Shown piece by piece: positions 3,001 through 40,708 of a stretch of 64,000 nt of DNA. The DNA lies in assembly GCA_030704615.1 (NCBI GenBank), contig CM060734.1, forward strand, positions 57,226,001 to 57,290,000. Reading direction: 5' to 3'. The position numbers and the translations under genes were made by a program. Source of the DNA: Takakia lepidozioides. Taxonomy: Eukaryota > Plantae > Bryophyta. A model generated the notes under the pieces. That model ran no database searches, was not told where the DNA came from, and saw only the letters and a program-made list of their open reading frames with translations. Each line of letters begins with the position of its first letter. Positions within the stretch are counted from its first letter, which is position 1.

Positions 3001-3064
3001 GATCTTTAAAATACTCGTGCCAGCGCTGCTCCATGCTCCACGGTAGACCTTCGTGCCCCAAACT
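24..3064 (-). pseudogene. PLS-class PPR gene with partial E domain and two N-terminal OSB-like PDF motifs; disrupted
   Basis: Repeating P/L/S motifs (VSWNAMIAGYAQHG, PNHFTFVCVCNACASL, NTLVDMYAKGGS) and an E-type end (HFGCMVDLLGR...VVWRALLGACRIH). Upstream exons 3064-2966, 2799-2667, 2527-2434 and 2181 onward have GT-AG borders. Lesions: TGA at 1109-1111, TAA at 303-305, frameshifts near 2434, 1835 and 697, small in-frame deletions, truncation at 24. The 5' end may extend to an ATG near 3528. Confidence 0.85.
268..1118. repeat. ~425 bp tandem duplication inside the PPR array
   Basis: 268-693 is near-identical to 694-1118; the junction has ATACTGT/ATATTGT microhomology and shifts the frame. 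Confidence 0.8.
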
Positions 3065-20003: not shown

Positions 20004-23000
20004 TCACCTTTTATCATACTTCATAAATCGAAGAGCTATTGCACCAGCTATCATAAAGAAAAGATTGAACACAACAAGGAGGCCCATACTTCTGAAACGG
20101 GTCTCATAGTTCAATGACATACTGTCACTAACAACACTCCAAGCCAATAAGTTACCTGCATCTTGCAGACGTACACACTTGCACTTGGGACAGCTACTAG
20201 GGGCCATGGTGCATGTGTCGCAAGGGGGTCGACTAGTGTCACAATAGAATGCTATGGAGGTGAGTGCACTGATGGTATATTGAGTGGGGTTGATCCAATA
20301 TAGCCATACCCAAAATTGTGGGATTTTCTTCTTTGGAATTATGAACCCTGAGGTCATGTTCCTGTTTATGTCAACAAGATGAAAATCAGGTGAAGAATGT
20401 CAAAATTGGAAATCTTGTGCGAGTTATCTGATTGTGCAATCAGTGGATCAAAAGTCTAGTTGCAAAACTTCCTCTACCTGTTAGCCAATGTGGCAACAGG
20501 AAAATGTCCGAAAACAGGAAACAAGATGAGGAGATGCTCTGGAAGGAACATTTTTCAGACCCCATACTTCATTACAAAGTCTTTCCCTGTTCTTTGCAAT
20601 GGGTTTCACATTGTAACCCAAATATTTTGGGAAAGACCAAAATAGGTGTATGTTGGATGTCCCATTACAGCCAACCCAACTATTAAAGGGGGTGGTCAAC
20701 CAATGTGTGGTACCTAGGGTAGAAGGTTTGTGTACCACATCGCCGCAGTTTATGGTCATGTGTCCACCTTAATGGTACGCAATAGCTCTTCGGAATAAAG
20801 AAACGACATATTTCCATTTGCTTTCACACAAATTTTTTTTGTTTGTTTTTTTGGCCCTTCAACATGCAATAACTATCTTAGCTTTGGTTTGAGACATCTG
20901 AACTGCCCAAATGCGCAGTACAGATGTCCCCATTAGAGCAACCCTTGAGCCCAAAAGACTCCCTGTAACGCCAAAATTACGTGATCGATTCAGGGCCTGT
21001 TGGGTTCTGTGGTGAGGCAGTCCCGACTCGCGCACACCCTTGCCCCTGAATTGCCCACGCTATCCCCGCGCACCTCGTCTCCCATTGGCAGGAAGGGGCG
21101 TGGTCGCTGCCAAGATGTTGACACGCATGTGCTAGACATGGGCATGGTCACGTTGACTTGGATTCAGGGGCGTATTTGGGGCCCTGAATACAGCGCTCGG
21201 GTTCAGGGCACGGAATGATATTCAGTGCCCGCTTTTCATGGAATATAGGGTTCAGTGCAAGGGTGTGGACGTTTTCCCGCCCACCTTGAAACTGTATACC
21301 CTGATATTCCGTTGGCGTGCTGGGTTCACTGTAGGGTGGAATGCTCTTAGGAGGGGCCAGGGTGGAGGCAGCAAGTTTTGAATGCCCATAAGCACAAAAT
21401 AACAACATTGACTGGACAAAAAATTAAAGATGGTTCCCACAAGTGTCCCATACATCGCACCAAATATTGGGCAGTATAACTCACCAGATGTTGACAACGA
21501 TGGGAATGAAAACTGTCGCCACCTGCAATTGGATCCATCAGTTAATAAGAATTTTTCATCAGACAAATCATTTTGTTTAGGGTGACAAACAACACAACAA
21601 TCTTGTTTCCCATGCTGGTATAGAGGCAAGATCTCCAAGTGGGTAAAAAATTTGCAGTGTTGCAAGATGGCATACACCTGCTATCTGCAGTTTTCTTATT
21701 CAAACCTTGGCTTGTGATCCAATAGCTGGTGCCCTTACTATATGCATCTCGTAGGTCTGGGAAAGGCGACTCAAAATGTGACCATTGATATGGTTTGTTT
21801 GGCATAAAGACATGTTTGTAAGCTCAGGAGAGACTTACCTGGGCATTTGGAGTCACCATCGCCAAGAAGATGCCAAAGAATGTGATCACTGTAGAGTACT
21901 CACAGAAAATAAACCAAAACTCAAAAAATGTTTTCACTGAAATTGTGGCTACTCCAGACATTGTAAAGCATATGGAACAGAAGAGGAGAGTTGAAAAGCA
22001 TATATATGGGATCTGCCAACACATGACGATGCTTTAATTTTCTCCTTTTCTTAAGACAGTCATAAAAATTCTTTCTCTAGCTCTTCTCTCATAAGCTCTT
22101 GGAGCTTTCCGTGGACTTTCTAAGTACCCTTCCATTTCATTTCATTTCATTTCTTTCTTCTTTCTTTGAATGTTATTAAACTTTCTTCTTGTCATGTTGT
22201 CTTTGGTCTGGACATGACCTGCTCTGGCTGTCTTTGATGCTGTCCTCAGTCTGTTGAGCTTTCCGCGGACGTTATAAAGCACCATTTCATTTCATTTCAT
22301 TTCATTTCTGTTTCTTATTCTTCCATTTCCTACTCATCCAGATAAACCTATCTGTGCCTTATGGTTGAGACTAGGATGCTATCTGATTGTCTTTAAGCCC
22401 CCAACTTAACAATTGATTAATGAAAACATCCGTTCCTAGTTTGTGTGACTTAGCCTCTATCATGAAATATGGCAAGACACACATGGCTGGTTGTCCAGAC
22501 CAGGGAGGAAACTCTCTGGCATGGCGTCTCCAACATGTCTCAAGCGGAAATTCAGCTCAAGGTAGTTGAGGAGAGAAGTCTTCTGAAGGCGTGATCCTAA
22601 ACCAGGACAGTCATCCCTCTAGAAGTTGTATTACCTCAGCCAGGGCCCAGGCGGAGTCGTACAGATACACAGGATACATGTTGGAGGCATGTTCACGATA
22701 GTATACTACCCGCTCTGCAGTAACCTGCACAAAACAATCTCCTTTTACTTATAAGAATGGGACACACAACCTCAGATGATTTAGAAGAAAGAGGAACCTC
22801 AGACTGAATAAACCTCTGCATGGCCACTCAAGACACCAACAGGTTAGCAGCTGAGACACGACATTGGCATGGCAGCTAATGCAGAGGTGTAAGCAGTCAG
22901 TGTTGGGCAGTACCAACAGCTCAGGTGAGAGATTGTACTCATAAGACGTTGTTTGCCGTAGCCTTGTGGCCATTGACCCCGCGCCCAGTTTGAGCGGGAA

Positions 23001-26000
23001 CAAAAGGGACAGAACCTACCTCTGTCAGGGGCTGATGTTGGTAGTAAGACTTACCTCCATATAAAGAATTAATCCGGGTTTTCCAGATATCCTCTAGAAA
23101 TCCCTTCACACAAGCATCAATCTGCTGTGTGTGATTTGCCCAAAAACTAGGCCTCAGGAGGGCCTGGGCTTTTGGCTCAGCCTCGAGACTTTCAAAGTTG
23201 GTAAACAGGGGTACAGGCACAATTCCCTTAATAGATTTGAAGAGAGCGTCTCTTTGGTGAGAGAACCCCGGACAGTGTATCAGAAAATGAATACTGTCTT
23301 CAGATTGCCCACACAACGGGCAATTGCACTCTCCCTTTCCTCTCTGCTTCTGTTTGCTGTTCAAAGGTAGGCTTCCTGCCCTGAGTTTAAATTTCAGTCT
23401 AGTGCCGAGAGTGGGTAGACCCTTGAGGTCATCCAAGATGTCCTCCCCCATGTCACAGACTGGAAACAAGTTCAGGGAAGTTTTCTGCCTAACTTCATTT
23501 TCATCAGACAATCTCATGGCAACAGACATGGCTGATGACAGGATGGATGATGTGTCCTTTAAAACTACATGCTCTAGCTTAGGCTTGGATTTCATGGCTA
23601 ATGGTACCATCTTGAGACTTGATAACAGGGGTACGTTGAAGGTTGCAATGACCAAAAGTGCTTCTAATAGAGTCCCGCATCAATTCAATCTCAAAGAAGT
23701 TCGTCCCTTGACTGGCTGGAGAGCGGTCTTAGACATTGGTGATTCAATGGGGCGCTCTAGGAAGACAACCAAGGGCAACAACTTCAACTTGAGAGTTTCT
23801 AATCGGTTTGATGCTCTGGATGAGGTTGAATCCAAACAGCCAGAAGGACACGATGCCCCTAAGTGTACGAAACCTGAACGTCCTGAATCTGAAGGATTTG
23901 GTACTCTGAATGGTTTACCAATCCTCAAGGTTTACACAAGACGAACAAATTCTATACACGGGGTAATTGTCCCCAAGCCGTCAGATGGACAATCTGTCCC
24001 TAAGTGTGCAGAGCCTGAACGTCGTGTAACTGAAGGATTTGGTACTCTAAATGGTTTACCAATCCTCAAAGTCTACACAAGACGAGCAAAATCTATACAC
24101 GGGGTAATTGTCCCCAAGCAGTCTGACGGACAATCTGCCCCTATGTGTGCGGAGCCTGTGCGTCGTGTAACTGAAAGATTTGGTACCCTGAATGGTTTAC
24201 CAATTCTCAAAGTTTACACAAGACGAGCAAAATCTACACATGGGGTAACTGTCCCCCCTTTGCAGAACGGTTGGCCGTCCAGGAGCAATCACAAGCTACC
24301 TAGACGACAAACAATTCACACGCAAAGGGCTGGCTTGCGGCTGGCCACTTTCAACTTCTCAGGGTTGACCAACGAAAGGAAACAACTTGAAGTGGGACAA
24401 GTTCTTCGGACTAATGATATTCATATCTGTGCTGGGCAAGAAACATGGGAAACGTCGGATAAACTGGTTGGAGATGTCATTGGTTATAAATGGGCAGGTA
24501 AGATGTGTACTCTCAAGGCAGCCTCTGCCAAACGCGGTCAAAAAGGGGTCGGATTCTTTGTCCGTGATTTCTTGTTTGACAATTGTGAAATTATCAACAA
24601 GGGTTTGAGGTACGAGCATAGTATCTGGTTAAAACTGAATTTGAAGGGCGGCATGAGTACAAAGGACCTCTTTGTTGGTTGTGTTTACATGCCCACAGAG
24701 GGGACCCTTAGTGCTGACGCAGACAAGGCCTTCGAAGATGTAAAGCTGGACTGTGCTTCGTTCCTTGCCAAAGGTCAAGTGGTACTATTGGGGGACTTCA
24801 ATGCCCGGGTGGGCAATCAGGACGATATCATTGGACCTTTTGGTGAGGATGAGCTGAATTCTAATGGCAGACGGTTAATTAACTGTCTAGAAGAGCTTCA
24901 GCTTTTGACCTTGAATAACAGGACAAGAGGTGACCAAGTGCAGTGGACTCGTGAGAAACCCCAAACTGGGAACGTTCCATTGTGGACTATATCATAATGG
25001 ACAAAATTTTGTTCCCCCAGTGTGCCAATGTGTTGATCGACAGAACTGATATTGGTACCTCTGACCACTTCCTGGTTTGGACTGAGATCAAAAGGTGTTT
25101 TCCCACCACCAAGAGATCTGTGAAACGTTCGATTCGGAAGTGGCGCATAGAAAAATTCCACAATGAGGAGGTCAAGGCTGAGTACGTCCAGGCCTTGCAA
25201 GAGGCTCTCCCTCATTTTGTCCAATCGCTCCAAGAACTTCAGTCACGCTCTGTTAACGCAAGAAATGAAGTCGAAAGAGCAGTGGACTCTTGGGAGAGTT
25301 TCGTTTCCTCCGTGGCTGACAAGATCATTGGGAGGAAACTAATTGTCTGCGGTGGAGCAGTTAATTGGTGGACTAATGAGATTAAACTCAAGATAGCTGA
25401 GAGACGAGCCCTCTATAAAGAGTGCTGCAATTTGGAAACCAACAGAGAATTGTGGGCGAGGTACTACCAGCTCCGTAAAGATATCAATCAGCTTGTTAGG
25501 TCTCAGAAGAAATTATACTGGGACAAGTTATACAGTGAAATAAACTTAAACCACCATGGTGGTAATGACAGGAAATTCTGGTTGGCCCTTCAACATTTGT
25601 ACAAGCCGAAAAACGGTCAGCAAGTACAAGCGCTGAAGACTACTACAGGTGCAGTGGTGACTTCATCGGTTGACATTGTCAAAACCTTTGAAACTCACTA
25701 CAGTATCCTTGGCAGAACTTCTAGGTCTAACAGTGAGGGGTCTTCTGCTGAATGGAGGGACACAGTTGGAAAAACTGTTCCTATGATTCAAAACAGCCCT
25801 GATGAACTGGAGTATATTTCAATGGCTTATAATGCTCCCATTAGTTCTTCTGAGATTGTGGAAGCAATTGAACATTTAAATGGATATAAAGCTGGTGGAC
25901 CTGATGGTATTGTCAACGAGCTTATCAAGCACGGTGGCGATCCCATGATAGAGGCCCTAGTTCTCCTCTTTAACCTTATCTGGAAGACTGAAATGATCCC

Positions 26001-29000
26001 CTTTCGCTGGCGACAGGGGGTCATTGTCAATCTATACAAGAAGGGTGACAGAGAAGAACCGGGGAACTACCGTGGCATCACGCTCCTCAATGCTGTTGGC
26101 AAGACATTCTGCAGAGTTATAAGTACTCGTCTCGAGGTTGATCTGGAGTCTAGAGGTTGTTTCCACGAAGGCCAAGCTGGCTTTCGGCGAAACAGGGGCT
26201 GTGTGGATCATATCTTCACTCTAAGCCAGATTATCCAGGGAAGGAAAAAAGAAGGGAAACCCACTTATGTCTTTTTCCTGGATGTCAAAAAGGCTTATGA
26301 CACAGTGTGGAGAGATGGCCTATGGTTCCGCCTCTGGTCTTTTGGGATCAAGGGAAAGATGTGGAGAGTTGTCCACAACTTGTATGCTCACACCAAAAGC
26401 TGTGTCACTGTTAACGGACAGAAGTCCAACTTCTTTGACATAGACCAAGGTGTAGCTCAAGGATGTACTCTCTCCCCTCTGCTCTTCAATGTTTTCATCA
26501 ATCAACTCCTCGAGGATGTGGAAAGTGAGGGATTTGGGTTAAGGGTGGGTGATACCACCATACCAGCCCTTATGTTTGCGGATGACTTCGCAGGCATAGG
26601 GGAGACTCCAACCAGGAGTTGATTGATTGCGCGAAGAGATACTTTGATCTTTGGGGGCTAGAGGCTAATGTCAGCAAATGTGCAGTGGTAGCATTCAACG
26701 ACAGAGGAGAGGGAGGAAGTGATCTTAAGTGGCAGTGGGGTAGCCAAGAGATCCCGGTCCTACCTTCCTACACTTACCTGGGCGTTGAGTTCTCCTCCAA
26801 TTGTAATTGGGATGCACATATCCGGAAAGTTGTTCAAACTGGCAAGGGCAAAGCTCTGGGGCTCACTAAATTTTTCCACTGCAGAGGGGTCAACTCTGAG
26901 GTTAAGAAAACCATGCTTTGTCGCGTTATTAGACCTGCCTTGGAGTACGGATCTGCTATATGGGTTGATAACTCCAACCAGGCTAAGTCTCTAGAATCCA
27001 TTCAAGTGGGGGTGCTTAAGGAGTGTATGTCAGCATGCTCCAAAACAGCCAATGTGGCTGTTCGGGGTGAGTTTGGCATTCCGTCCTTAAGCTCCCGACG
27101 AGATGAAGTCAAGGTCAGATGGTGGGGTCAGCTGCAACATATGCCCAACACCAGATATCCTAAGGTAATCGACTCTATATCTTGGAAACAGGACCGCCCT
27201 GTCAAACAGGCTAAGTCCTGGCAGAAGAGAGTAGAAGAGATCCTCAAGGACCTGGACCTGGATCCGCAAGTCTTTGACCCTGCTGGATAAATCTGACTTA
27301 GAGGCTGTAGTGTCCTCAGCTCAGGTGAGAGACTTAACCTAGTGGACATGCGCTGATGCCTTATCTAGAACAGAAGATAGGGAAATGAAATGGTGCTTTA
27401 TAACGTCCGCGGAAAGCTCATAGAGCTTATGGGACAAAATGGAAGAAAACCTGAGAGGAAACAAAACCAGAGCAAAAATAAAAACTATTGAAAGTTTGCA
27501 AAAGAGGTATCCATGAGAATATCAGAAAGAAACATACTTTGCAGTGTGACATGGCCACCATACAATGACAACACATATAAGAAACCTCTGCTTTTATTTG
27601 CTCCTAAGTAATGGAATTTGCTGAATATTGATAAAACTGCTGGCACCTGTGGAATGACATTATTTGCATTGGATATGGCCACCATCACCACTGATATATA
27701 GATAAGGCCCATTCGGGACACCATTCCTGGAGTAGTGTTGTACTTGATCTGCCATGGAGCCACACAATGCATTAAAAATAGGGGTCTACAGGATGGATGA
27801 CAAACGTCAAATCCCCACTTTGAAACCTAGCTATGTGGCGTTTTGTTTGTTCCCATGAAGTCAGGCGCAATTTTAAGTTTTTGCATGATTCAGTGGACAA
27901 CAGCACAATAGCAGCACTTCACAGATCACTTGAATATGTTAAGCTAATGAGCCTAGGAAGATTGACCCTACAGTAGACACCCTTCCTGAAATAAGGTTTG
28001 ATATGCTATCTGTGTGTGCCTTAGCTAAGAGTGAGATGCACACCTTTTGGGGTGCCAGAGGGTCAAAGGAGTGAGATGATTGAAACAAGATTCCTCTTCT
28101 CCTTAAGGATATCACAAAGAAAAGAAATACCCACCTGCCAGAAAGTGCTCCCCAGAATCAAACCAAGTGTGGCGACCACTCTGATTCGACCAAAACTGCA
28201 ACCAACAAGGCGTGCACACAATCCGTGTAGTAGGATATACAAACCACATCCACTGATCAGCTCAGAGAATAAACTTCTAACCTAAGGACCCAGGAGGGAA
28301 GGCTTGGGTATTTCAGAGTTGTCAATCAGAAACTCGTATGTGCATGAATCAGAAGGTTCATATCCTTAGGGGAATAAATTGTAAGCCATATACATCACTT
28401 CAAATTAGGGATTAGGCATGAGCTCAGATAACAGTTGAGGCAAGATCGTTTTGCTAGCTGAAGCAATTAAGTTTTAATCTAGCCAAGTGAAAAGGGCTTG
28501 ACCTGTATGAAGTATTCCGCCAATAGGTTTTGAATTGGCGCATAATAACAACTCGAAACATGAGGGGCCATGTAGCAGCATATCCTCGCATCAGTGGTTC
28601 TTTCCCTAACATCCCTCTGCCAAACTTGAAGGAATCCAGTTGCTCCACTGCACCAAATAGACAAAGGCATGCTGATTGCAGTCAATTAATTGTTTCAGGT
28701 CGAGAGAATGCATGGGCTTGGGATATGGTGAGCCATATGATGGGTAACTGTCAAACTACGGTCCTTTCCGAAGATGAACAGAAATGAAATGGTGCTTTGT
28801 AACGTCCGCGGAAAGCTCATAGAGCTTATGGGATAAAATGGAAGAGAAAACATGAGAGAGGAAACAAAACCAGAACCCAAGAATGAGAACTAATGTTCTA
28901 GTGATTGTCTAAGGGTGAAGACCTCGTGCAGGTAAGCTGCCAAGCATTTCTGATCCTCATAATGGAAGACCTCAGTGAGAGATTGGGTTCCACTGAATAA

Positions 29001-32000
29001 ACAGTGGAATCTCCCACGGATCTCGTAGTATAGAGGGCAGTAGAAGAAGTGTTTTCCCTGCTCCAGGGTAAAATAATTTCAGTCGTCCTTGGTCAAAAGG
29101 GGGAATGAAAGTTTGTATTCTGGAAATTAACATTCAAAGACAGATATTCACCAAAATGTGTGGCAAGGTGCAAAGTGGAGCATTTCACAAGCATGACACC
29201 AACACTTCCAAAGAACATCAATTTTGTGGGGCGCTTCGCCACTGAAGTACAGACGAAATACAATTCTCGTAAGCTATTCAGCACCAAGCATAGATGAACT
29301 CACATGAAAGTAACATATACTCCTGTTTTCACTCACGTAATTGTGATTCTGTGGCAGTACGCCTCCAACAGTGATACATTACCTCTTGAGAGGCTTCTCA
29401 CCTTCAGGAGCTCTGTGTCTTGACAGTCTAGCTAGAAATAGGTAGCCACAGACCACGCGACAAGGGTAGTTGCTTTCTGCAGGTCCAATTGTGTATGGCA
29501 GAACTACTCGTGTGCATAAGGTAAGTGCGAAAGACTTGAAAAATTCCATAACCTTGACATCAGAACAGACAGGTTGAGAACTGGACATACGGTTTTCCTG
29601 GTTAAGAGCACTTGTTTGATAATCCATTGCAAAGTCACGTAAAGCATGATGTCCAATCCCAGCTCCAATTATCTCCAGCATGTATGATGCTGGGTTCTGA
29701 TGTGCTGGACATTCCAATACTCCAGGAAGCGAATGGAAGTATTCCTGAAACAGCCATACTAGCATTATTCGGAGCCCCCATTGTCTTACATATACTGCCG
29801 GTTGGATGAAAACTCTGACAGTAACATCACCAACAGATACGACTTACAAAAATGTGCAGATGAGTAGTAGGGTTCAAGTGTGGTTTCCCAAGCATGAGAA
29901 ATGTTTTGCATAAATGTTGCACGGGAGTGAGCTCCCTACAATAGACTGTCTCAGGCGTACCAAAAGGTCTTGTGCATCTTGTCCAGTAGGTCCAAAATAT
30001 GCAATTTCTCCCCCACGCTTCAAGAGCAAGAGGTGATCAAAACACATAAACAGGCGTCGGCTAGGTTGATGTATGGTGCAGATGATGCTACGCCCTGATC
30101 CGACTATATTAGAGATACCCCGCATCACAATATCCGCAGCTAGGCTGTCCAGCCCACTTGTTGGCTCATCAAGAAACAATATACTCGGGTTCGACACCTG
30201 CAAACCTGAGGACCAGTTACTTTGGAGTGCGAATTGGTCAGACAGACTTCAATGGACTTTGTAGTCCAGTAGTATTACCAACCATCCCAAGATGTCAGAC
30301 ATATATGTATCGGACACTCTGAAAGCATTGACACCCAACAAAGACAACTAAATCATCTCTTGTAGTTGGAAATCTACATACAAGTTCAACGCCGATGGTG
30401 AGACGCTTTGCTTCCTCCTCTGAGAGTCCACCATCTCCAATGTTACCCACCAGTTTGTTGCGAATGTTGTTCAACTCCAGCACAACCAGGACCTGAGCTG
30501 TTTCAAGTTAAAGGTTAATGGATCGTAAGCTAACTTAGAATGAAGAGGCCCTTTTATGAAGCTAGGGGATATGTAATCTTGACCAGAATAAGATGCACTA
30601 CAAGTCATTGATAACATCTCTGGAGAAGGGGTGTTGTGTCAAACAATTTACTGCATTGAAATGTAACCTAAATTGGTTCTGTATCCTGTGCCTGCCTATA
30701 CCTCTTCGATGAATTTTTCCCGACAAGCAGAAGTAGTGTCTCTTGGAAGGCGAAGAGCACAACTAAACTCCAGAGACTCCTTGACCGTGATGAAATGAGT
30801 ATGAATGTTGTTCTGCTCCACATATCTGTCAACAAGAGGAAAAATACCATTCTTACACACACTGAGCCACGTACTCACTTCCAACTGCTAGTGGCACAGT
30901 AATATCATTCATATGTGCTATTAAATTTGACACTTGGCTCTTACAGGAAGCCAGTATAGTAGGCTGAAGCTAGACATTTAGTTTATCACAGTGGAATCCT
31001 CTGACATAAGCATCCAGACCATTCCATCCAACTGACGCAAAGCTGATGTTGAATATCAGGAGTAATGTCACAGAAATTTCCAACACCCAATCTCGCCCCC
31101 AACTCACCCGGATATATGAGCAAATGTCTCTTGTACTTTAGGGTACCCATTGACAAGAATGTCACCAGTCATTCTGCCTATGGTTTTGCGGCCAGCAAGA
31201 ACATCAAGCAGGGTTGTCTTCCCAGCACCACTGCTCCCCATGAGGGCAGTCATAGTCTTTGGCTTTGAAAACCCTGAGACATTGGAAAGCAACTTCCGTG
31301 GATCTTTGCATCCCGGTATATCCACCTGGCGAATGAAACCAAGAAATCAGGTACAGCTGTTCAATTCCAAACGGCTTTACAAATATATCATATGATCTTC
31401 AATAAATTCTCAGTCAACTGAATCGATTCTTTAGAAACCCTGTAACTCCTGTAGCACTTTTAAGGTCTCTTAAAGACATCCAGGCAGAGCATTTTATACA
31501 GCAGATCGACCTAGTTTACACAAGTGGCAACTCCTCTGGATGTTCAAACCTGCATGTTTGCACGGATTGTCCTGGTTTTGGTGTACATGCTGGTGGTTTC
31601 TAGTCATCTCCAGACCAGTGTTGGTTACCAAAACCCTCAATTGAGATCTGTTACAGCAGCATATTCGCCACGACATACATACAGCCAGTCGATACAGCCA
31701 ACAACTTACCAGGTGGCTGAACTACTTGTTCGCCATGCAGAAACAGTTGAAGTGGTTGCCGGGTCAGAATCCATATGGCCATAAACTCCTTCCCTATTAA
31801 TCCAAGCTCTCCTTTAAAAATTGAGACAGCATGTAGTGCAACTTCAAGTGATTCGTGATCACAGGCTCGGGCGGCCAGTCATCAAAGAAGTATTTAGATT
31901 TGCCTGTTATTGAAAGAACCATTACCTCATAAGTCAGCTGGTGGAAGGATAAAATCATGGGCTTGAACCTAATTGCGGATATTTTATTCACAGCAACAGA

Positions 32001-35000
32001 AGCACGAGCCCCTGCTGTATGTCGCACCATATCTTGATAGTATACTTCTTTAGCCGCAAGGGACCCTCTAATAGATTTCACCTCTGGAACCTTGGCTGTC
32101 AGTTGGGGAGTAGACTTTGAAGAAGGTTGCAACTGGGCAGGAGGATGCTTCACCTGGCACAGATCAATACCAAACCAATCCCCGTGGCACGAACAAGGGG
32201 CAAGGGTGAGAGGAATAAGGAACCAGATAAAAAACTGGCTCACACTCCATGAGAAATACCAGACAATTGATGAGTAGTATTTGTGCCACAGACTCATGTA
32301 AAGAACAACATGTGCACAGCATGGAGGTAGTTTTGAATTCATTAGTTCACCTAGCAATGTAGAAGTACATTAATCCTGATAAGTGTATGCCACATTTCAA
32401 TGTCCTAGTGATAACTGTAGAGCTAGATAACTGCAAATCATACCTCATCATGGCGTATGTTGACGATAGTGAAGAAACAGAGCAAAGTCAGCAAAGAGTA
32501 GTAGCAGCAAAGGACAGTGAGAGGAACCCAGACACCACGAAAGAATGTGGTGGGAAACTGGTAGAGATCCAGGTATGCTTGTCCAATTCTCATTTGTCCT
32601 TTGCCAATGCAATAACTAATGCTGTCACTGCAAGCCTGCATAGATACAACAGCTTGTCAAATCAGGCCAGAGCCCTATATATCCAAATACATGGAAGGTG
32701 ATGTGACTCCTCCAATGCTTCTGGAAAGGAAACTTCTTAGTCCTCTTTGCAATTGTCAATTCTTGAATTCAAATTGTACTGCTTCCATTCTTCTCCTCAT
32801 AATCAGGGATTTGACAGGTCTGCACTTCAGGTCAGAAGAGCCTTGACAGACTACTAACTAAGGGAGGAAGAGGCTGACAATCATCTTGGCAAAGGCAAGA
32901 GAGATGGGAATGGTTTGTGTCTTTTCATTGAAGCGATGCCTTGCTGGTCAAGAAAGAGGGTTAGGATTGATAAGGCTGCATGTGGACTATGGGTTGGCAA
33001 ATCTTCTCTCCAAAAGATGTTTGGAAGTTTCACGTCAGCAGACTTTTGTACAGATTCTGGATGTCATTGGTGCTGAGTGTACCACTAGTCTTGTACATTC
33101 AAGCAAAGTACGGCAACTCATCAAGCCCTTGAGAAGGAACATCATGATACAATATTATACGGTTCGTTGTCTGACACTATTTTCCTTCTTTCAAGTTTGT
33201 ATTGTTGGTTGCGTTCACTTACTTGGTCATATCTACCAGAGAGGAACTCATTGCAAATTAGTGCTGTAACACCCCACTGAAGAGGGCTAATATAATAGAC
33301 CCAGAGCCACCAACCAGGCACCTTGTTTCTACTGACCAAAAAACCAGAAAATAACAAAAAGAAGAGGATGAATAGACCTGCAGTGGGTACAAGAAGTAGT
33401 CAGGACTCAAAACGTTATGTTAGACTTGTGCTGTGGTTCATCCCCTTTTCTCCATTCCCTACTACATACTGAAGTTCTCTAACCCTCTTCTCTATATATA
33501 CAGACACAAAAGCCAAAATATATGGCACCCACATCACAAAAATATATACACACACAAGGTTTACTACCACCCATATTTTCTCTGGACTTGACTGCTATTT
33601 TTGGATGGTGAGTATGGGAAGAGGGCGAAGATTTCTCTTTAAGAGGGTCAGATAAATAAAGCACAACTGATTCGAGTCTAGGTTCACAGAATCCAACTTG
33701 CTAGGGCATTTGCTGCTTCTTTTGTATGGCAAAATGAAACCATAGCTCGCACGAATGCTGCAAAAGTGAGTGCCTCAACAAAGAGCACTAGTAGATATAA
33801 AATATAATGGGCTCCATTGTGGGCAGGGCTTAGCCCTGTTAGCCAGTATACAAGTGGAGTATATACGGCCATCTGCATTTCACCAAGGTAAACTGTTCAG
33901 CAAAGCACAACCACCTTAGGCCAAACTTTCTCCCATTCTTTAGCATTGGCTTTTGATGAAGAAAGATAAAGCAATGGCACAACTGGAACATAATGAATGA
34001 AAGACAACATGTGTCAAATGTTGTGCCACGGTACGCATCTCCACAGATTCTGGGAGAGCCAAAACAAGGAGCTTGCAAGGAGCAGCTCTGTAGCTGCCTG
34101 TACCAAATCCCATACCAATACACTCAGACAAACAGTTAAATCCCCACTACCCTTTTCATATCCTCTTCCCACACCATGGTCATGAAATACGTGTAGAACA
34201 GTGTTGCACAAAAACCTCCCGGATGTATTATGTACGTCTGAAGTAGCCACTTTGCTACACATACTTCAACTGTGATATAGCTTTGTTGCAGTCTGCACGT
34301 GCATGACTGCAATATTTACAAGTTTCCATACCTCTATCAAAGTGTAGGGGAGCTGGCTGAGAGTGCAGGCAACCACAAAGGAACTGGGCCTAAAGAATCT
34401 TGCAGCATAATGCTTCTCAAACACCTACATGACAAAGTATTGGCAGTTATGCTCTGTCCTTTGGAAGAACACACAAAATGGCAGAACACACAACAGGAAA
34501 ACACATGCATATGATTGGAATGGTGGACTAGAATGGAAGTTTGTCTCCTCCAATTTTAATTTACTCCCAGTAACACAACCAGAAAAGAGTGTTTTGGCAG
34601 CTCAATCAGACTATTTTCTGCAATGAAGCACACTGTCAGTTCACAATCCAGGAAAGCAAGCAAAGCATCTAATAAAAATGAACTTCCAATTCAGCCAATT
34701 TGAAATCTGCCAGAGCTTAACCTTCCGCTCATCTAGTTGTATAGGTATCTGTGGCACAGTGTTCAATGATAGGGTCACGGTTGCAAGGAAAGTAAGAGAC
34801 TTCCGTAAATCCATATCAGAGCGATGATGAGTATCTGGCATTTGGTAAAATAGAGTCCCAGTGAATGTTCCTAAGATTGCAAGCTGCACATCCACTTACT
34901 GGATCAGATCACAGAAAAACTTGTCTAAATAATGTGCATTGGCTTCATGGCAACATTGTAACTACAGCAGTCAGAACTAGCAGATTTTGTGCCAAAAGGA

Positions 35001-38000
35001 AATGAAATGAAATGCTACTTTATACAGATTTTGTGCCAAGGTAAAGAAAGCTGATTAGGGACAAATACTAACCAAGCATACCCTCACAAATCCTTGGTAC
35101 AGCAAGCATGAATTAGACCTCGTGGCACTAAGCAGCCAAGGTTGGCGGCAAAGATGCAGATTGCAAAGATAGTCAGTGTGACTCATCGTAAAAGGAATGG
35201 AACCAATGTCTTAAACCTGTAGCTTAATGAGCTCTGAAGAGATCTGGTTTTCCATTTTAAAGTTGATAGACTACTGCACCTGCAACAGACGGGCATAGAT
35301 GTAGGTCCGATTACGAATTAATAAGGTGGCCTGCCGTTTGAGCACTGTCCTGGTTGAGGGCCACCAGTCTTGGAGATATTCCTGGTCAAAAACCTTTGCA
35401 GCTGATTCATTTTCCTGCACAAAAGCAGAGTACAATGTCTTCTCATGTCAATGATGAAACCAAAAAATTGCTTGAAAATGAATATTTCAAAATGTTTTGC
35501 TAGACTCCTTGAAACTTACAGGATGTAATTAATTCACTGTAAGGATTCCTGCACCAAATTACCATGTCTTCTCATGTCAAGATTGAAACCAAAAAATTGC
35601 TTGAAAACAAATATTTCAAAATGTCTCGAAACTTACAGGATTCAAATGATTCACTGTAAGGCGACTAGGCACCCACCCTCTATACAGTCATATAATGTGT
35701 AGAGTAATTCGTGACATAAATTACAAAACTGCCAAGGAATTATCTGGAGTGTTCTCTACTCATTACAAATTTTCCATCCAGGTGCAAATATAGGTTCTTG
35801 ATGCAGGCATACCTTTTCCAGAGGACGCTCGAGCTGCATGCGAACATTTCCAGTGACTTCCTGAACTCTGTTCACAATGTCTGCAGCATTGCAATCGCTC
35901 TCTGTGATGTATTCAAGTCTACCACTTCTGTGCACAATTCCTGTCACGCAGTCTCCCTCTGTTACTTGTGTTGTCTGTAGAATGTCAGCAACAGCTGCCA
36001 TTCCTGTGGCTTCGACTTCAGTAACTACTATTCTTGCCCTTTGACCTGCTCCAAAGGCAATGCTGATGGATGAGAAGGAGTGAACTCGAAAATGCTTTGT
36101 AGACAAACTCTCGATTTGAAGTGAACTCTTTAAGCAGGTTGGGCAGGCTACCACTTGAAGGTCCACCAAACAGCAAACAACAGATTTTAAACAGCTAGGT
36201 GTCACATATAACCCCCAACAAGGAATTTCAGGGTCCACACTTGTTTCAGAGTCATGTTCACTCAAAGATGAACTAACTACCCTGCAAGCATGAAAACATT
36301 TGGCACAGGAACTTTGAAAAGGAATGGGACAGCTGCAGTGTATCCAATAGTGTCGTGGTCTTCACCTCACCTGCCTTGCCAGCTCTGTCCATTAGTTTCA
36401 GGCCTAGAGGCTTTGCTGCTTCCAACCAAAGCTCATGGACATTCTGCAACCAGGGTGAGTTACTCAACTTGGACTCCAACAAAAATATGTAGTATTGGTG
36501 GTCTCAAACCAAAAACTTTAGAAACCAGAAACAGTAATTTCGAATAGAATACAATCAATCAAACAGCACAGCCACAGCAGAGAATAGATGATGCTACCAG
36601 CAGATGTTTCCATCCTGTGGGGTTTCCAAGCACTCAAATTTAGTGGAGGTAACCTAATCAGCATGTTGACTATGGACCCATGACCCGAAACTAGTGCTCT
36701 CACTGCATTGGTGATTTATTGTTTCCGGAAGCAACACATTTGAATCTACTATGGATTATTGCATACCTCAGGGCTATTAACAACACGCAGGACATCTTTG
36801 TGCATATTGGAGTCCATATACACCTTCACAAAGTCGTTGATTGTTAGATGTCTAGAACCAGGCTTCATAAATTGCAAGCCCTCTTTTGTGGCAACTTCCT
36901 GAAGAAAGTTGGGTACATCCACATGCTTTGGTTTCACGTACCTGCAATCTGCAGCAAACTCGGTAAGTTCTTAGATGAACAATTACTTTCAGTGCATATA
37001 GTGAAAATCTAAAGAGTACAGTCAGTTGAAAGATGAGCAAGGTACAGACAAGAAGAGAAAACTCTGACCTCCAGTGACCCTACAAAACTACATAACCTTC
37101 AAGATTTGTCTGAGTATTTGTGTTTTACCCAAGTTCAGCGAAATACGGGAGCACATCTTCACGCGGTCCCTGATAAATGATGCGCCCTTCATGCATAACA
37201 ATGAGCCTGCACAAAAAAAAAAGTGGCAAACAATTGACTAAGGAGAAAGACTGGATACTAGGCTCTTTCATTGTAGTTGTTCAGCTGAGCTAGTTTCAAC
37301 CCATGAGGGCATAGGGCTTCCAAGAAGGACAACCATGCTTCATGTCATGCCCTGTACTTGCTGTCGTTGTAAGATAAATGAAAGAGCAACCAACAATGAT
37401 ATATAACAGATCAACAACGACTACACGTGCTTGCAACTGCATTTAAGACTGTTTTTGGCCGCCATCCAACGTAGCAAAGAGCATACAAATGCCGCCACAG
37501 ACATGTCACCTGTCGAAAAGGTCGAACACTTCAGGGGAAGGCTGAAGCAATGAGAACAAGCAGGTGTATCTTCTTATCCTTGCAAATGTGCGAAATGCAG
37601 AAACAATATCATATGCAGCAGAGCTGTCAAGTCCCGTGCTGATGTCGTCAAGGAAATAGACAAGAAAGGTGCCTGCCATGTGGAAGGCATCAGTTTTGAT
37701 TTAACAGCATGACTACCGATCATAAGAGCAAAAGGCATTGCTTTATAGAACACTAGGAGGGAATTGTAGGCCGGTTTGTCATTATGAAATAGTAACTTCA
37801 GCACTCTGTGGATACCATGTCAGCAAGATGCCTTCAACCAGGCAACTTGAAGCAGTCTACAGTCTACACTTGTCTCACGGGGCCTTCTGTGGTTTCTTTC
37901 CTTCTTTCTCGAGCAATAGTTTTTATTTTTGGCTCTGGTTTTGTTTCCTCTCTCATGTTTTCTTCCATTTTGTCCCATAAGCTTTCCGCTGACGTTATAA

Positions 38001-40708
38001 AGCACCATTTCATTTCATTTCTTTGGTTGCATGTGGGCTGTTTTTTGGCTCTGGTTTTATTTCCTCTCTCTTGTTTCTTTCCATTTTGTCCCATAAGCTC
38101 TTTGAGCTTTCCGCGGACGTTATAAAGTACCATTTCAATCTTTCCTAATGATGGACCAACAATAACACACTTATTAGGATGCCCGTATCATACACTAGAG
38201 AAGGTATTTGATCACTCAGTCCTTAGTTTAATAAGCTTGTACCAAACTGAAAAAATCCTTTACTGGGAACTTTGAACAGAGAACGGTACATACCTGAGGC
38301 CATTTCAGCAGTTGTAACCCGATGTCGTTCGCCTCCACTGACTCCACGCATTGATGCATTTCCAACTCTTGTGCCAGCCACGCCCCGCAGTCCAAGCATA
38401 TGCAGTGTCAACTCCAAAGGCAAATTCTCCCCTCCGAGCTCCCTCTCCATCTGCCAGACATATAAACTCTCTTTCAGAGTCTTTTCATTGTGTTTAAGGT
38501 TCTCACAAAGCTCACAGGAAGCTGAAACACTTCATAGAGCCAGAATAGGGGATGAGAAGTAATTTGGTGCTCAAGTGTTCAGGACAAAGGATTATGTTTG
38601 AATGTTGTCATGCTTAACTCAACTATATCATGTATATGTGAGACCCTAAAGATCCAGGAACTTACAGTTCCAGCCTCACGGCCAAGGGCTGACGTCATGA
38701 AATTATTTGTACACGCGTATGCAAACTTGCAAGTTTCACGGACAGTGAGTGTGGGCAAATGGCTGTCTGTCTGTGCAATATAAGTGGCCACACGCCGCAC
38801 TTGGAAATCCTCCAAACCTTTTCCATTGTAAGTCACCTTCCCACTGAGGTGCATGCTGCTGTCCACCAGTAGCCTTCCAGCCAATGCTTTGTGCAAACTG
38901 CTCTTCCCTGGAAAAGTATTTATTTGGTCTCAGAACTGCACCATTCAAAGCCGTGTCCAATAGATTCCTAACCTAAAAGAGATTTTGCACCTAAATGCTC
39001 TCCCAGTTTCTGCGGATGCTGTGACTAGCATATTAATAGTTAAGTTTTAAATACGAAGGATAACTGGTCAACATGCAAGCAAGAAGAAAAAGAAGTCATG
39101 TATAAGCAGACCAGACACAAGCGACGCAAGACAGGTAAATCGAAGTTTGATCCCCTGCTCTTAGTTTTGGTCCTCACCACATCCAGGAGGACCACACACA
39201 AGCGTCAATGACCCAGGCATTAAATAGCCCGAACAGTTTTCTAACACTTGAAACTTTTCTGTAGCTGTCCTTTCTGCAAAGCAGGGTAGTAAGCACTTCA
39301 AACATACTGATCCCACCGTGTCATAACCTTGTTTTGCCCCTGCCACTTCAGCAGTAAAATTTATGTCCTTGAATTTGACTGCCTGCAATAAAGCCCAAGA
39401 GGTTCAGGAGTTGCTCCAAGGCATACGAGGTGGGTAGCCTTAATTTGTCGAATTGCAAGAGATTAACTAGACTACTTTACTTCATTAAAAGAAACTAATT
39501 TAGCATGATGAAAGTATCTCCACATTTGGTAGACTGGTTTTAAGATTCAAAGCTAACTGCTTTGAGGCTAACTGATGTCAATCACTTTACTTTGATGTTA
39601 CTGAACTTTGAAATTACCTGAGGTGGACTTGGAGGAAAATACTTGCTAAGTTTCAGTAGGAAAGCCAGCAGGCCATCCTTAAGAAGCATTTCAATGCCTG
39701 TTTCTGCCTGGGGCCCACTTGGTAGAGAAGGCCTCTTCCTCATCAGCACCTAACATAAGAGCTAAAACTCAGGAAACTCACTTACGTGGTATATTGTCTC
39801 ATTCAGAATGATCCACCCCCTCCACATCCATGGCATCAACCTCTCAATCCTCATTTGCCCTATAACCAAGACCAGATATCTGGGTACTGGATGCACCTTT
39901 AGGTCAGCACATCAAAATCTTTAGCTTATTCTTACTGAAGCTACTTGCTGTGTCTTTTAGATCAATCTCTTGATGGACCAGTGCTAGAACAGACCTGACT
40001 GCTTTTGGAGAATATCCTGCGGATTCTCTAGGTTGTGGCACCACTACCCACACATAGTTCTTAGCTCTGGCTCTGGTTTTTGTTTCGTCTCTCATGTTTT
40101 CTTCCATTTTGTCCCATAAGCTCTATGAGCTTTCCGCGGACGTTATAAAGCACCATTTCATTTCATTTCCCACACACTAAGTTCATTAAAGTGTTTCGTG
40201 CAGTAGATGTGCTTACTGACTGTAAGAACGCTTGGTCTTCCATAGAATGCCCGAGGTCCGGAAGCTGCTGGACCAAACTCATAATCACGTTCATCAAGTC
40301 ATCTTTCCCCATACTTTGCACTAGATTCACGATCACATTCATCAAATCATCTTTTCCCATGGTTTGCAACCCCAGTTTTAGGCGAGTGACAGCTCTTTCT
40401 TTCGAAGGACTTGTCTTATGCTTATCCACGCTCTTCGTGAAACTGTCATCGGAGCTGTGGTCTACCAGTTCGCTCAGGCCTGGACGGGAGACTGCACGGA
40501 GTGTGGATCTTCTTCGAATTGGTTCAGGTAAGTAGAAGGTGGCGTTAGGACGCGCATGCCATTCACGCAGCCTCTCTGTAAAATAATGTGCCTCAGAAAC
40601 TTTGATTGGCCCTGTTCGTTGATCCCTGCCCTCATCTTGGCTCCATGGACCGAAAGCCATTTCAACGTCTCTACTCTCATCTCGACTCCATGAACTACTG
40701 GTAGCCAT
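20004..40708 (-). CDS. Full-size ABCG (PDR-like, NBD-TMD-NBD-TMD) transporter with an internal PDZ-like domain; 29 exons, apparently intact
   Basis: Exons traced by hand (some borders +/- a few nt): 40708-40217, 39749-39618, 39382-39178, 38907-38666, 38450-38294, 37672-37510, 37206-37129, 36941-36767, 36443-36371, 36045-35813, 35414-35280, 34883-34722, 34424-34332, 33872-33698, 33377-33223, 32635-32444, 32153-31926, 31325-31108, 30826-30702, 30492-30382, 30197-29961, 29744-29591, 28647-28503, 28195-28135, 27748-27647, 22724-22635, 22012-21839, 21522-21485, 20361-20004. Motifs: [59 protein letters not shown]. The start ATG is inferred. Confidence 0.92.
22933..27316 (-). mobile_element. Non-LTR retrotransposon (APE-RT-CCHC; RTE/RTEX-like by inference) with inverted 5' part
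   Basis: 16 bp TSD CAGCTCAGGTGAGAGA (22917-22932, 27317-27332). EN motifs ATFNFSG, QETW, LGDFNA, SDH and RT motifs [31 protein letters not shown] on + (23536-27316). C-terminal CPLC..H..C and 3' end on - (22933-23535). Frameshifts near 24972, 26615 and 27278. Confidence 0.93.
23857..24260 (+). repeat. Three ~141 bp (47 aa) coding tandem repeats in the LINE N-terminal region
   Basis: PKC..PER...[24 protein letters not shown] three times. Confidence 0.9.

What the first reader, a model, noticed from the sequence alone, without database searches (positions are those of the whole stretch)
35813..36443. PDZ-like domain spliced in frame into a full-size ABCG transporter
Seen: two exons (36443-36371, 73 nt; 36045-35813, 233 nt) with GT-AG borders and matching phases (0-1-0) lie between the NBD1 exon ending VVNSPE and the exon leading to TMD1 (ENESAAKVF...RQATLLIRN). 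They encode [102 protein letters not shown]. Known: KPLGL(x)L, V.EV...G.AA, GD.V.GI and a final helix plus strand (V.M.LERP) follow the PDZ pattern; ABC transporters normally bind separate PDZ scaffolds rather than contain one. Inference: a transporter with a built-in cytosolic peptide-binding module for regulation or localisation. The 306 nt cassette is symmetric (phase 0-0), so it could have arrived by exon shuffling and could be alternatively skipped.
Basis: partly seen in the sequence, partly recalled or inferred. Interest (0 to 1): 0.85.

Follow-up and report, generated by a model that had tools for sequence, protein, structure and literature searches.

The report
PDZ-fold domain built into ABCG transporter
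Two conserved exons place a roughly 100-residue domain, predicted to have the shape of a PDZ protein-docking module, between the first ATPase domain and the first membrane domain of an intact plant ABCG transporter; the arrangement goes back to streptophyte algae, I found no paper on it, and what the domain binds is unknown.

Summary
The two minus-strand exons (36443-36371 and 35813-36045) have the stated AG/GT borders and phases 0-1-0. They sit in an intact, roughly 20.7 kb full-size ABCG gene (about 40708 to 20007).

Both exons are conserved. Annotated ABCG proteins of four liverworts carry the same insert, and so do Spirogloea, Closterium and Chlorokybus. Five further land-plant genomic contigs carry at least the main exon among ABCG exons.

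The three intron positions and phases are identical in the window, Marchantia and Closterium, so the cassette is ancient, not a recent arrival. Insert-bearing proteins form one clade on a tree built without the insert columns.

Pfam finds no PDZ. An AlphaFold2 model of the Marchantia ortholog (pLDDT 77) matches only canonical PDZ domains (Z 12.0, rmsd 1.7 Å over 83 residues; all top 50). It places the conserved PLGL motif where the carboxylate-binding loop belongs.

Peptide binding, regulation and exon skipping remain untested.

The scan had already noted the same architecture at five other loci of this genome, one of them followed up. I rate it a new variant of a known kind, of moderately high interest.

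The parts
20007..40708 (-). Whole full-size ABCG gene (N-terminal extension, NBD1, PDZ insert, TMD1, NBD2, TMD2); the ends are approximate
   Evidence: tblastn of liverwort orthologs P0007, P0037 and P0039 and of P. patens P0106 is colinear from 40687 to 20007. Stops occur only where alignments run into introns.
40163..40708 (-). First coding exon: N-terminal extension carrying the family motif (..YF.E.L.EW..R)
   Evidence: ORF; weak alignment to the P0039 N-terminus; the same motif is visible in the N-termini of P0007, P0039 and P0055.
37128..39388 (-). NBD1 exons. Walker A GPPGCG|KS is split by an intron, the signature is VSGGERHR, and Walker B reads [10 protein letters not shown].
36767..36958 (-). 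Last NBD1 exon, ending ..VVNSPE in phase 0; donor GT at 36766-36765
   Evidence: 56% identity to P0039 460-521.
36371..36443 (-). PDZ exon 1 (73 nt): strand bA, the KPLGL carboxylate-loop motif and strand bB
   Evidence: Homologous exons at L001:5682-5753 and L002:4455-4526, a further one in L005, and in Marchantia L006 and Closterium L007. 68% identity to P0039 523-544.
36046..36370 (-). Phase-1 intron inside the bB-bC loop, splitting a Gly codon
   Evidence: Same position and phase in Marchantia and Closterium and in L001, L002 and L005.
35813..36045 (-). PDZ exon 2 (233 nt): bC, aA, bD (GD.VTG), bE, aB and bF (..QLERPLEK)
   Evidence: dN/dS of 0.20-0.33 against five other loci.
35277..35414 (-). 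Exon for the connecting segment before TM1 (..[15 protein letters not shown]); the 3' end is approximate
   Evidence: this segment is conserved in all family members.
32441..34892 (-). TMD1 exons
29592..31346 (-). NBD2 exons (Walker A GSSGAGKT, Walker [13 protein letters not shown])
20007..28648 (-). TMD2 exons, including a 4.9 kb intron (22728-27616); the protein ends ..KYDKR

Best explanation
The two exons are constitutive coding exons of an intact full-size ABCG transporter. Together they encode a domain of about 100 residues with a canonical, non-permuted PDZ fold. It is inserted in the cytosolic link between the end of NBD1 and the connecting segment that leads into TM1. The insert defines an old green-lineage ABCG subfamily. 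It is shown from Chlorokybus, Spirogloea and Closterium to liverworts and mosses. This is probably the early-diverged 'V1-Type' of Cho et al. 2020. Shown here: exon structure, conservation, purifying selection, one clade, and the predicted fold with the loop motif in place. Inferred: the domain keeps a working ligand groove. The evidence is a conserved P-L-G-hydrophobic loop, a hydrophobic bB, an invariant Ala at the start of aB, and conserved Val/Ile further along aB. I infer that it acts in cis as a membrane-proximal docking or regulatory module. It may bind the tail or an internal motif of a partner protein, or an acidic lipid, and so set where or when the pump is active. The transporter's own C-terminus (..KYDKR) is an unlikely ligand.
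For: Splice sites and frames were read directly. Exon 2 hits the Riccia ABCG P0007 at residues 583-655, between ABC_tran (259-424) and ABC2_membrane (678-889), plus exon fragments that end at the same exon-intron border. Annotated proteins of Riccia sorocarpa, Marchantia and Calypogeia carry the insert, as do Spirogloea, Closterium and Chlorokybus. hhalign of the land-plant profile against the Chlorokybus insert gives probability 95%, E 2e-8. A tree without the insert columns puts all 10 insert-bearing proteins in one clade, SH-aLRT 100. Introns have the same positions and phases in the window, Marchantia and Closterium. dN/dS is 0.20-0.33. The AF2 model with 40 sequences has pLDDT 77 and pTM 0.69, with order bA-bB-bC-aA-bD-bE-aB-bF. 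Foldseek's top 50 are all PDZ, best E 2.4e-4. VIA-align, without a Foldseek prefilter, gives Z 12.0, rmsd 1.7 Å over 83 residues; 111 chains reach Z>=8 and the top 50 are all PDZ. The Atlas fold search returns PDZ families at TM 0.61-0.72. Language-model features point to PDZ clusters. The top profile hit in the PDB is the PDLIM2 PDZ.
Against: Pfam gives no PDZ hit for the window's exons, and only 1 of 36 relatives reaches E 0.077. Profile hits in the PDB are not significant (E 0.1-0.3). Closterium has PIDL instead of PLGL, so the glycine of the loop is not universal. I have no RNA reads for this locus, and nothing shows any ligand. Strongly conserved surface motifs (EVE.TG, QLER) could equally mean a fixed intramolecular contact rather than a free docking site.
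Confidence: 0.75

Rival explanations
1. The domain has a PDZ-like shape but no longer binds an outside ligand. It would be a structural or allosteric spacer packed against NBD1 or the connecting helix, playing a role like other in-cis regulatory inserts of ABC proteins.
For: The most invariant residues lie in bC (V-E), the aA region (G, I, T), the GD turn and bF (Q-L-E-R), not only in the groove. Closterium lacks the loop glycine. The position just before the membrane-proximal connecting segment suits a fixed contact.
Against: The X-hydrophobic-G-hydrophobic loop, the hydrophobic bB and the aB residues that would line a groove are conserved from Chlorokybus to bryophytes. A mere spacer would not need them.
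Confidence: 0.3
2. The cassette is facultative. Because it is phase 0-0, it is often skipped, giving transporter isoforms with and without the domain.
For: Skipping both exons keeps the frame. The NCBI P. patens model P0106 starts inside the domain, so transcript forms that lack an intact domain may exist there.
Against: All annotated orthologs in liverworts and algae include the insert. Purifying selection and 0-1-0 introns conserved from Closterium to bryophytes indicate regular use. No read evidence for skipping was obtained. P0106 also lacks NBD1, and some NBD1 exons were not detected in the matching contig L003, which looks more like a truncated or decaying copy than regulated skipping.
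Confidence: 0.1
3. The resemblance to PDZ is an artefact of prediction, and the insert has another small beta-rich fold, for example TrkA_C/RCK_C-like.
For: Twelve of 36 relatives give weak TrkA_C hits (best E 0.063), against one weak PDZ hit. All sequence-level PDZ signals are below significance.
Against: Two independent structure aligners return only PDZ domains in their top 50, with rmsd 1.6-1.7 Å over 80-83 residues. Even the low-confidence first model retrieved only PDZ. Secondary-structure order and the loop motif fit PDZ.
Confidence: 0.07

Closest known systems
Canonical eukaryotic PDZ domains (e.g. INADL PDZ, DLG1/PSD-95 PDZ1-2, NHERF1 PDZ1, PDLIM2 PDZ)
   Same: Same predicted fold and strand order. 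An X-hydrophobic-G-hydrophobic loop precedes bB, a GD-hydrophobic motif starts bD, and a long aB is followed by a terminal strand.
   Different: Sequence similarity is below Pfam and PDB-profile significance. The first residue of aB is an invariant Ala, not the His of class I PDZ domains. The bB-bC loop is long. The domain is embedded in a transporter, not in a scaffold protein.
Early-diverged 'V1-Type' full-size ABCG of Viridiplantae (Cho et al. 2020, PMC8359288) and PDR-type ABCG in general
   Same: NBD-TMD-NBD-TMD order with ABC_tran and ABC2_membrane twice. The taxon range fits (charophytes, mosses, a lycophyte; absent from most angiosperms). By sequence it lies next to the oomycete full-size ABCGs.
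   Different: That paper never mentions a PDZ or any insert (0 occurrences). I did not compare its sequences, so the equation with V1-Type is inferred. Oomycete relatives and the one Oryza PDR sampled have no insert.
ABC transporters that use PDZ scaffolds in trans (CFTR-NHERF1, MRP2-PDZK1, ABCG2-PDZK1 axis)
   Same: The same logic of coupling an ABC pump to a PDZ interaction at the cytosolic face (established knowledge; papers listed).
   Different: In those cases the transporter carries the ligand tail and the PDZ is a separate protein. Here the PDZ is part of the transporter, and its own tail (..KYDKR) is not a typical ligand.
In-cis regulatory inserts of ABC proteins (e.g. the CFTR R domain)
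   Same: An extra cytosolic module placed between core domains of a full-size ABC protein (established knowledge).
   Different: The R domain is disordered and lies after NBD1 before TMD2. This insert is a folded PDZ-like domain before TMD1.
Bacterial ABC-2 permeases annotated with a PDZ domain (recalled from memory only)
   Same: A PDZ combined with an ABC-2-type membrane domain.
   Different: Not checked here (one search found nothing). As I recall, the PDZ there lies in an extracytoplasmic loop of a separate permease subunit, not in the cytosolic NBD-TMD link of a eukaryotic full-size exporter.

Membership tests
PDZ domain | Six strands and two helices in the canonical, non-permuted order bA-bB-bC-aA-bD-bE-aB-bF | tested here: met
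   AF2 model of Marchantia P0038:560-684, built with the window's exons in the alignment: pLDDT 77, element order as required. VIA-align Z 12.0, rmsd 1.7 Å over 83 residues; the top 50 are all PDZ, and so are Foldseek's top 50. This is a prediction, and it is for the ortholog.
PDZ domain | Carboxylate-binding loop X-hydrophobic-G-hydrophobic directly before bB | tested here: met
   The window has K-P-L-G-L-K-L. In the model the motif occupies residues 21-24 and bB residues 24-29. It is conserved in bryophytes, Spirogloea and Chlorokybus; Closterium has PIDL.
PDZ domain | Score above the gathering threshold of a Pfam PDZ model (PF00595, PF13180, PF17820) | tested here: not met
   No families at E<=10 for the window's exon peptides. 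One of 36 relatives reaches E 0.077 for PF00595.
PDZ domain | Binds a C-terminal or internal peptide in the bB/aB groove | not testable with these tools
   No ligand is known. The family's own C-terminus ends in Lys/Arg-Arg.
Full-size (reverse-topology) ABCG transporter | NBD-TMD-NBD-TMD with two ABC_tran and two ABC2_membrane domains | tested here: met
   Pfam on the ortholog P0007. The window is colinear with P0007, P0037 and P0039 over the whole length, with intact Walker A and signature motifs.
PDR subfamily in the strict sense | PDR-specific Pfam domains ABC_trans_N (PF14510) and PDR_assoc (PF08370) | tested here: inconclusive
   Neither is hit in P0007 at E<=0.01. PF08370 is precomputed for two Closterium members, and PF14510 for none of the insert-bearing proteins.
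V1-Type full-size ABCG (Cho et al. 2020) | Falls in that paper's early-diverged clade | not tested
   Only the taxon range and the early-diverging position agree.

The most novel reading that the evidence does not exclude
The insert is a working PDZ that recruits a partner's tail, an internal motif or a phosphoinositide. It would then set the polar placement or the activity of the pump. That would make this the first eukaryotic ABC exporter with its PDZ scaffold built in, an arrangement ancestral to streptophytes and later lost in most seed plants.
Probability: 0.35. Interest if true: 0.8.

Novelty: new variant of a known kind. Interest (0 to 1): 0.64.

Why it matters
PDZ domains are best known as animal scaffold modules that bind the tails of channels and transporters. 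ABC pumps such as CFTR and MRP2 rely on separate PDZ proteins. Here the module is part of the pump, in a subfamily that has kept it from streptophyte algae to bryophytes.

This gives a testable handle on how an early plant ABCG is placed or switched. The tests are to delete the domain or mutate its loop in Marchantia or a moss, and to pull down its ligand.

It also shows that a canonical-order PDZ fold goes undetected by Pfam in sequenced plants. Comparative ABCG studies such as Cho et al. 2020 treat these proteins as ordinary PDR-type transporters.

Tried and rejected
- **Pfam.** The two exon peptides gave nothing. Scanning 36 relatives gave only weak TrkA_C, Peptidase_U32_C and single PDZ hits, which I rejected as family assignments.
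- **Spurious search hits.** P0001, P0005, P0009 and P0012 from the representative search are long tandem-repeat proteins with nonsense Pfam hits. I set them aside.
- **First AF2 run.** With 16 sequences the pLDDT was 41. I used it only as a lead, although Foldseek already returned PDZ alone.
- **Self-ligand idea.** The family's C-terminus ends ..[FY][DN][KR]R, directly after the last membrane helix.
- **Chlorophyte origin.** Cymbomonas has an insert of similar length at the same place, and groups at the base of the clade. But hhalign gives only 7.5% probability, so homology is not shown.
- **P. patens locus.** The look-up for P0106 found nothing on record.
- **Literature.** Searches for a PDZ inside a plant ABCG, or for bacterial ABC-2 permeases with a PDZ, found nothing relevant.
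- **Joined model.** The complete domain was folded from the Marchantia ortholog instead.

Full report
**Observation**

On the minus strand the two proposed exons are as described.
- An AG at 36445-36444 precedes exon 1 (36443-36371, 73 nt), which is followed by a GT at 36370-36369.
- An AG at 36047-36046 precedes exon 2 (36045-35813, 233 nt), which is followed by a GT at 35812-35811.
- The upstream exon ends in phase 0 at 36767, and the downstream exon begins at 35414.

Each exon was searched by reference, and the complete domain was studied in an ortholog that has a continuous protein record.

**The gene**

tblastn of orthologs shows one intact gene running from about 40708 to 20007 on the minus strand. 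In order it contains:
- an N-terminal extension;
- NBD1, with Walker A GPPGCG|KS split by an intron;
- the insert;
- a connecting segment (..[15 protein letters not shown]);
- TMD1, NBD2 and TMD2, the last interrupted by a 4.9 kb intron.

The protein ends ..KYDKR. Stops appear only where alignments run into introns.

**Conservation**

Exon 2 alone was searched without a length filter against 1.8 billion representative proteins.
- It found a 1500-residue Riccia fluitans ABCG, P0007. The match lies at residues 583-655, between ABC_tran (259-424) and ABC2_membrane (678-889).
- It also found eight short ORF fragments of genomic contigs that end ..LQLERP..(K)V, that is, at the same exon-intron border.
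- Four long tandem-repeat proteins in the list are spurious.

Further searches widened the set.
- Annotated ABCGs of Riccia sorocarpa, Marchantia polymorpha and Calypogeia fissa carry the insert.
- About 15 more exon fragments turned up.
- ABCGs of Spirogloea, several Closterium species and Chlorokybus have the same insert in the same place. For Chlorokybus, hhalign against the land-plant profile gives probability 95% and E 2e-8.
- Cymbomonas, a chlorophyte, has an insert of like size there, but homology is not shown (probability 7.5%).
- Oomycete full-size ABCGs, the next-best hits, have no insert.

In five genomic contigs, exon 2 lies between NBD1 and TMD1 exons of one gene. Three of these (L001, L002, L005) also show a clear exon 1; L003/L004 keep only a degenerate one.

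On a maximum-likelihood tree from which the insert columns were dropped, the ten insert-bearing proteins form one clade. SH-aLRT support is 100, and the branching follows the species order.

dN/dS of exon 2 between the window and five other loci is 0.20-0.33, with dS saturated.

The three intron positions and their phases (0, 1 inside a Gly codon, 0) are identical in the window, Marchantia (L006) and Closterium (L007). The cassette therefore predates the split of land plants and zygnematophytes.

**Fold**

- Pfam gives nothing for the window's exons and almost nothing for 36 relatives.
- A profile search of PDB sequences puts the PDLIM2 PDZ first, but at E 0.1-0.3.
- Language-model features point to PDZ clusters.
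- AlphaFold2 with 16 sequences was poor, pLDDT 41.
- With 40 sequences, including the algae and the window's two exons as separate rows, the Marchantia domain (P0038:560-684) reached pLDDT 77 and pTM 0.69. The element order is bA, bB, bC, aA, bD, bE, aB, bF.
- Foldseek returned PDZ domains only in its top 50, best E 2.4e-4.
- VIA-align against 48,161 representative chains, without a Foldseek prefilter, gave Z 12.0 with rmsd 1.7 Å over 83 residues. 111 chains reached Z>=8, and again every one of the top 50 was a PDZ.
- The ESM Atlas fold search gave PDZ families and green-lineage PDZ-like proteins at TM 0.61-0.72.
- In the model the conserved P-L-G-L sits directly before bB, where the GLGF loop belongs. 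An invariant Ala begins aB, and conserved Val/Ile follow one and two turns later.

I read this as a canonical-order PDZ fold with an apparently intact groove. The groove reading is inference from secondary-structure positions, not from coordinates.

**Mechanism**

Shown: the domain lies on the cytosolic side, immediately before the connecting segment that enters the membrane.

Inferred: it acts in cis as a docking or regulatory module. It may bind a partner's tail or an internal motif, or an acidic lipid.
- The protein's own C-terminus ends in basic residues right after the last helix, so it is an unlikely ligand.
- Strong conservation of surface motifs outside the groove (EVE.TG, QLER) leaves room for the rival view that the domain is packed against the transporter as an allosteric element.
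- Skipping of the cassette would keep the frame, but nothing I obtained shows it.

**Known context**

Cho et al. 2020 (PMC8359288) describe an early-diverged 'V1-Type' of full-size ABCG. They report it in Chara, Klebsormidium, Physcomitrella, Sphagnum, Selaginella and Amborella, and not in other angiosperms. The word PDZ does not occur in that paper. The family found here fits that type in taxon range and position, but I did not compare the paper's sequences.

No searchable paper combined PDZ with plant ABCG.

One JGI fragment of this exon had been auto-named 'C-terminal processing protease CtpA/Prc'. That is a PDZ-bearing enzyme, so an annotation pipeline may have picked up the similarity.

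**Earlier notes of this scan**

Five other loci of the same genome were noted with the same architecture. One was followed up and read as a transcribed PDZ-fold domain in a moss ABCG. These are leads, not evidence. My fold, conservation and intron results were obtained independently, and they extend the range to streptophyte algae.

**Limits**

- The structure is a prediction for an ortholog whose domain is about 47-50% identical to the window's.
- The organism was not identified by my own tests. The window is not P. patens, and its exon 2 is at most 61% identical to any database fragment.

**Verdict**

The exons are real and conserved. They encode a PDZ-fold insert that defines an old ABCG subfamily. 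This is a new variant of known kinds (PDZ domain, full-size ABCG). Ligand and role are unknown.

Noticed in passing
window 37640-37670 (minus strand, NBD1 Walker B): Walker B of NBD1 reads [10 protein letters not shown]. The catalytic Glu that the liverwort orthologs keep (LLDEISTGLD) is Asp in this copy, while NBD2 has the canonical LDEPTSGLD. This may mark a degenerate first ATP site in this paralog.
   Followed up: partly
window 27382-27457, 28776-28858, 37930-38012, 38055-38137, 40078-40169: A short dispersed repeat of about 80 nt occurs five times in introns of this gene, in both orientations, at 85-99% identity. It looks like a small MITE-like element.
   Followed up: no
window 23832-24254: Three tandem copies of a 141-nt unit (82-86% identical to the first copy) lie inside the 4.9 kb intron of the TMD2 region.
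   Followed up: no
window 35426-35624: The intron just downstream of PDZ exon 2 contains a tandem duplication of about 129 nt (89% identity over 70 nt). It repeats the pyrimidine-rich stretch and a ..tgcag acceptor-like site. The upstream copy would lead into a stop-containing frame.
   Followed up: partly
window 40163-40708 (minus strand): The N-terminal exon carries an internal tandem duplication of about 16 residues ([13 protein letters not shown] twice). It also has a motif shared with algal and liverwort orthologs (..YF.E.L.EW..R), so the long N-terminal extension is a second family-specific feature of unknown role.
   Followed up: partly
L003/L004 (contigs carrying P0052; same peptide as the N-terminus of P. 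patens P0106): In this moss copy some NBD1 exons and the bA part of PDZ exon 1 were not detected. The NCBI model (995 aa) starts at a Met inside PDZ exon 2. This may be a truncated or decaying paralog expressed as a half-size form.
   Followed up: partly
L007:12536-12562 (Closterium sp. Naga37s-1, P0059): The annotated protein reads through the conserved donor after ..LERPLVQ into ..VGGMRLEGS. Other Closterium models splice there, so this is probably an intron-retention error in that annotation.
   Followed up: partly
window 2080-3064: A first-stage note on this window reports a PLS-PPR protein fused to OSB-type ssDNA-binding motifs. I did not examine it.
   Followed up: no
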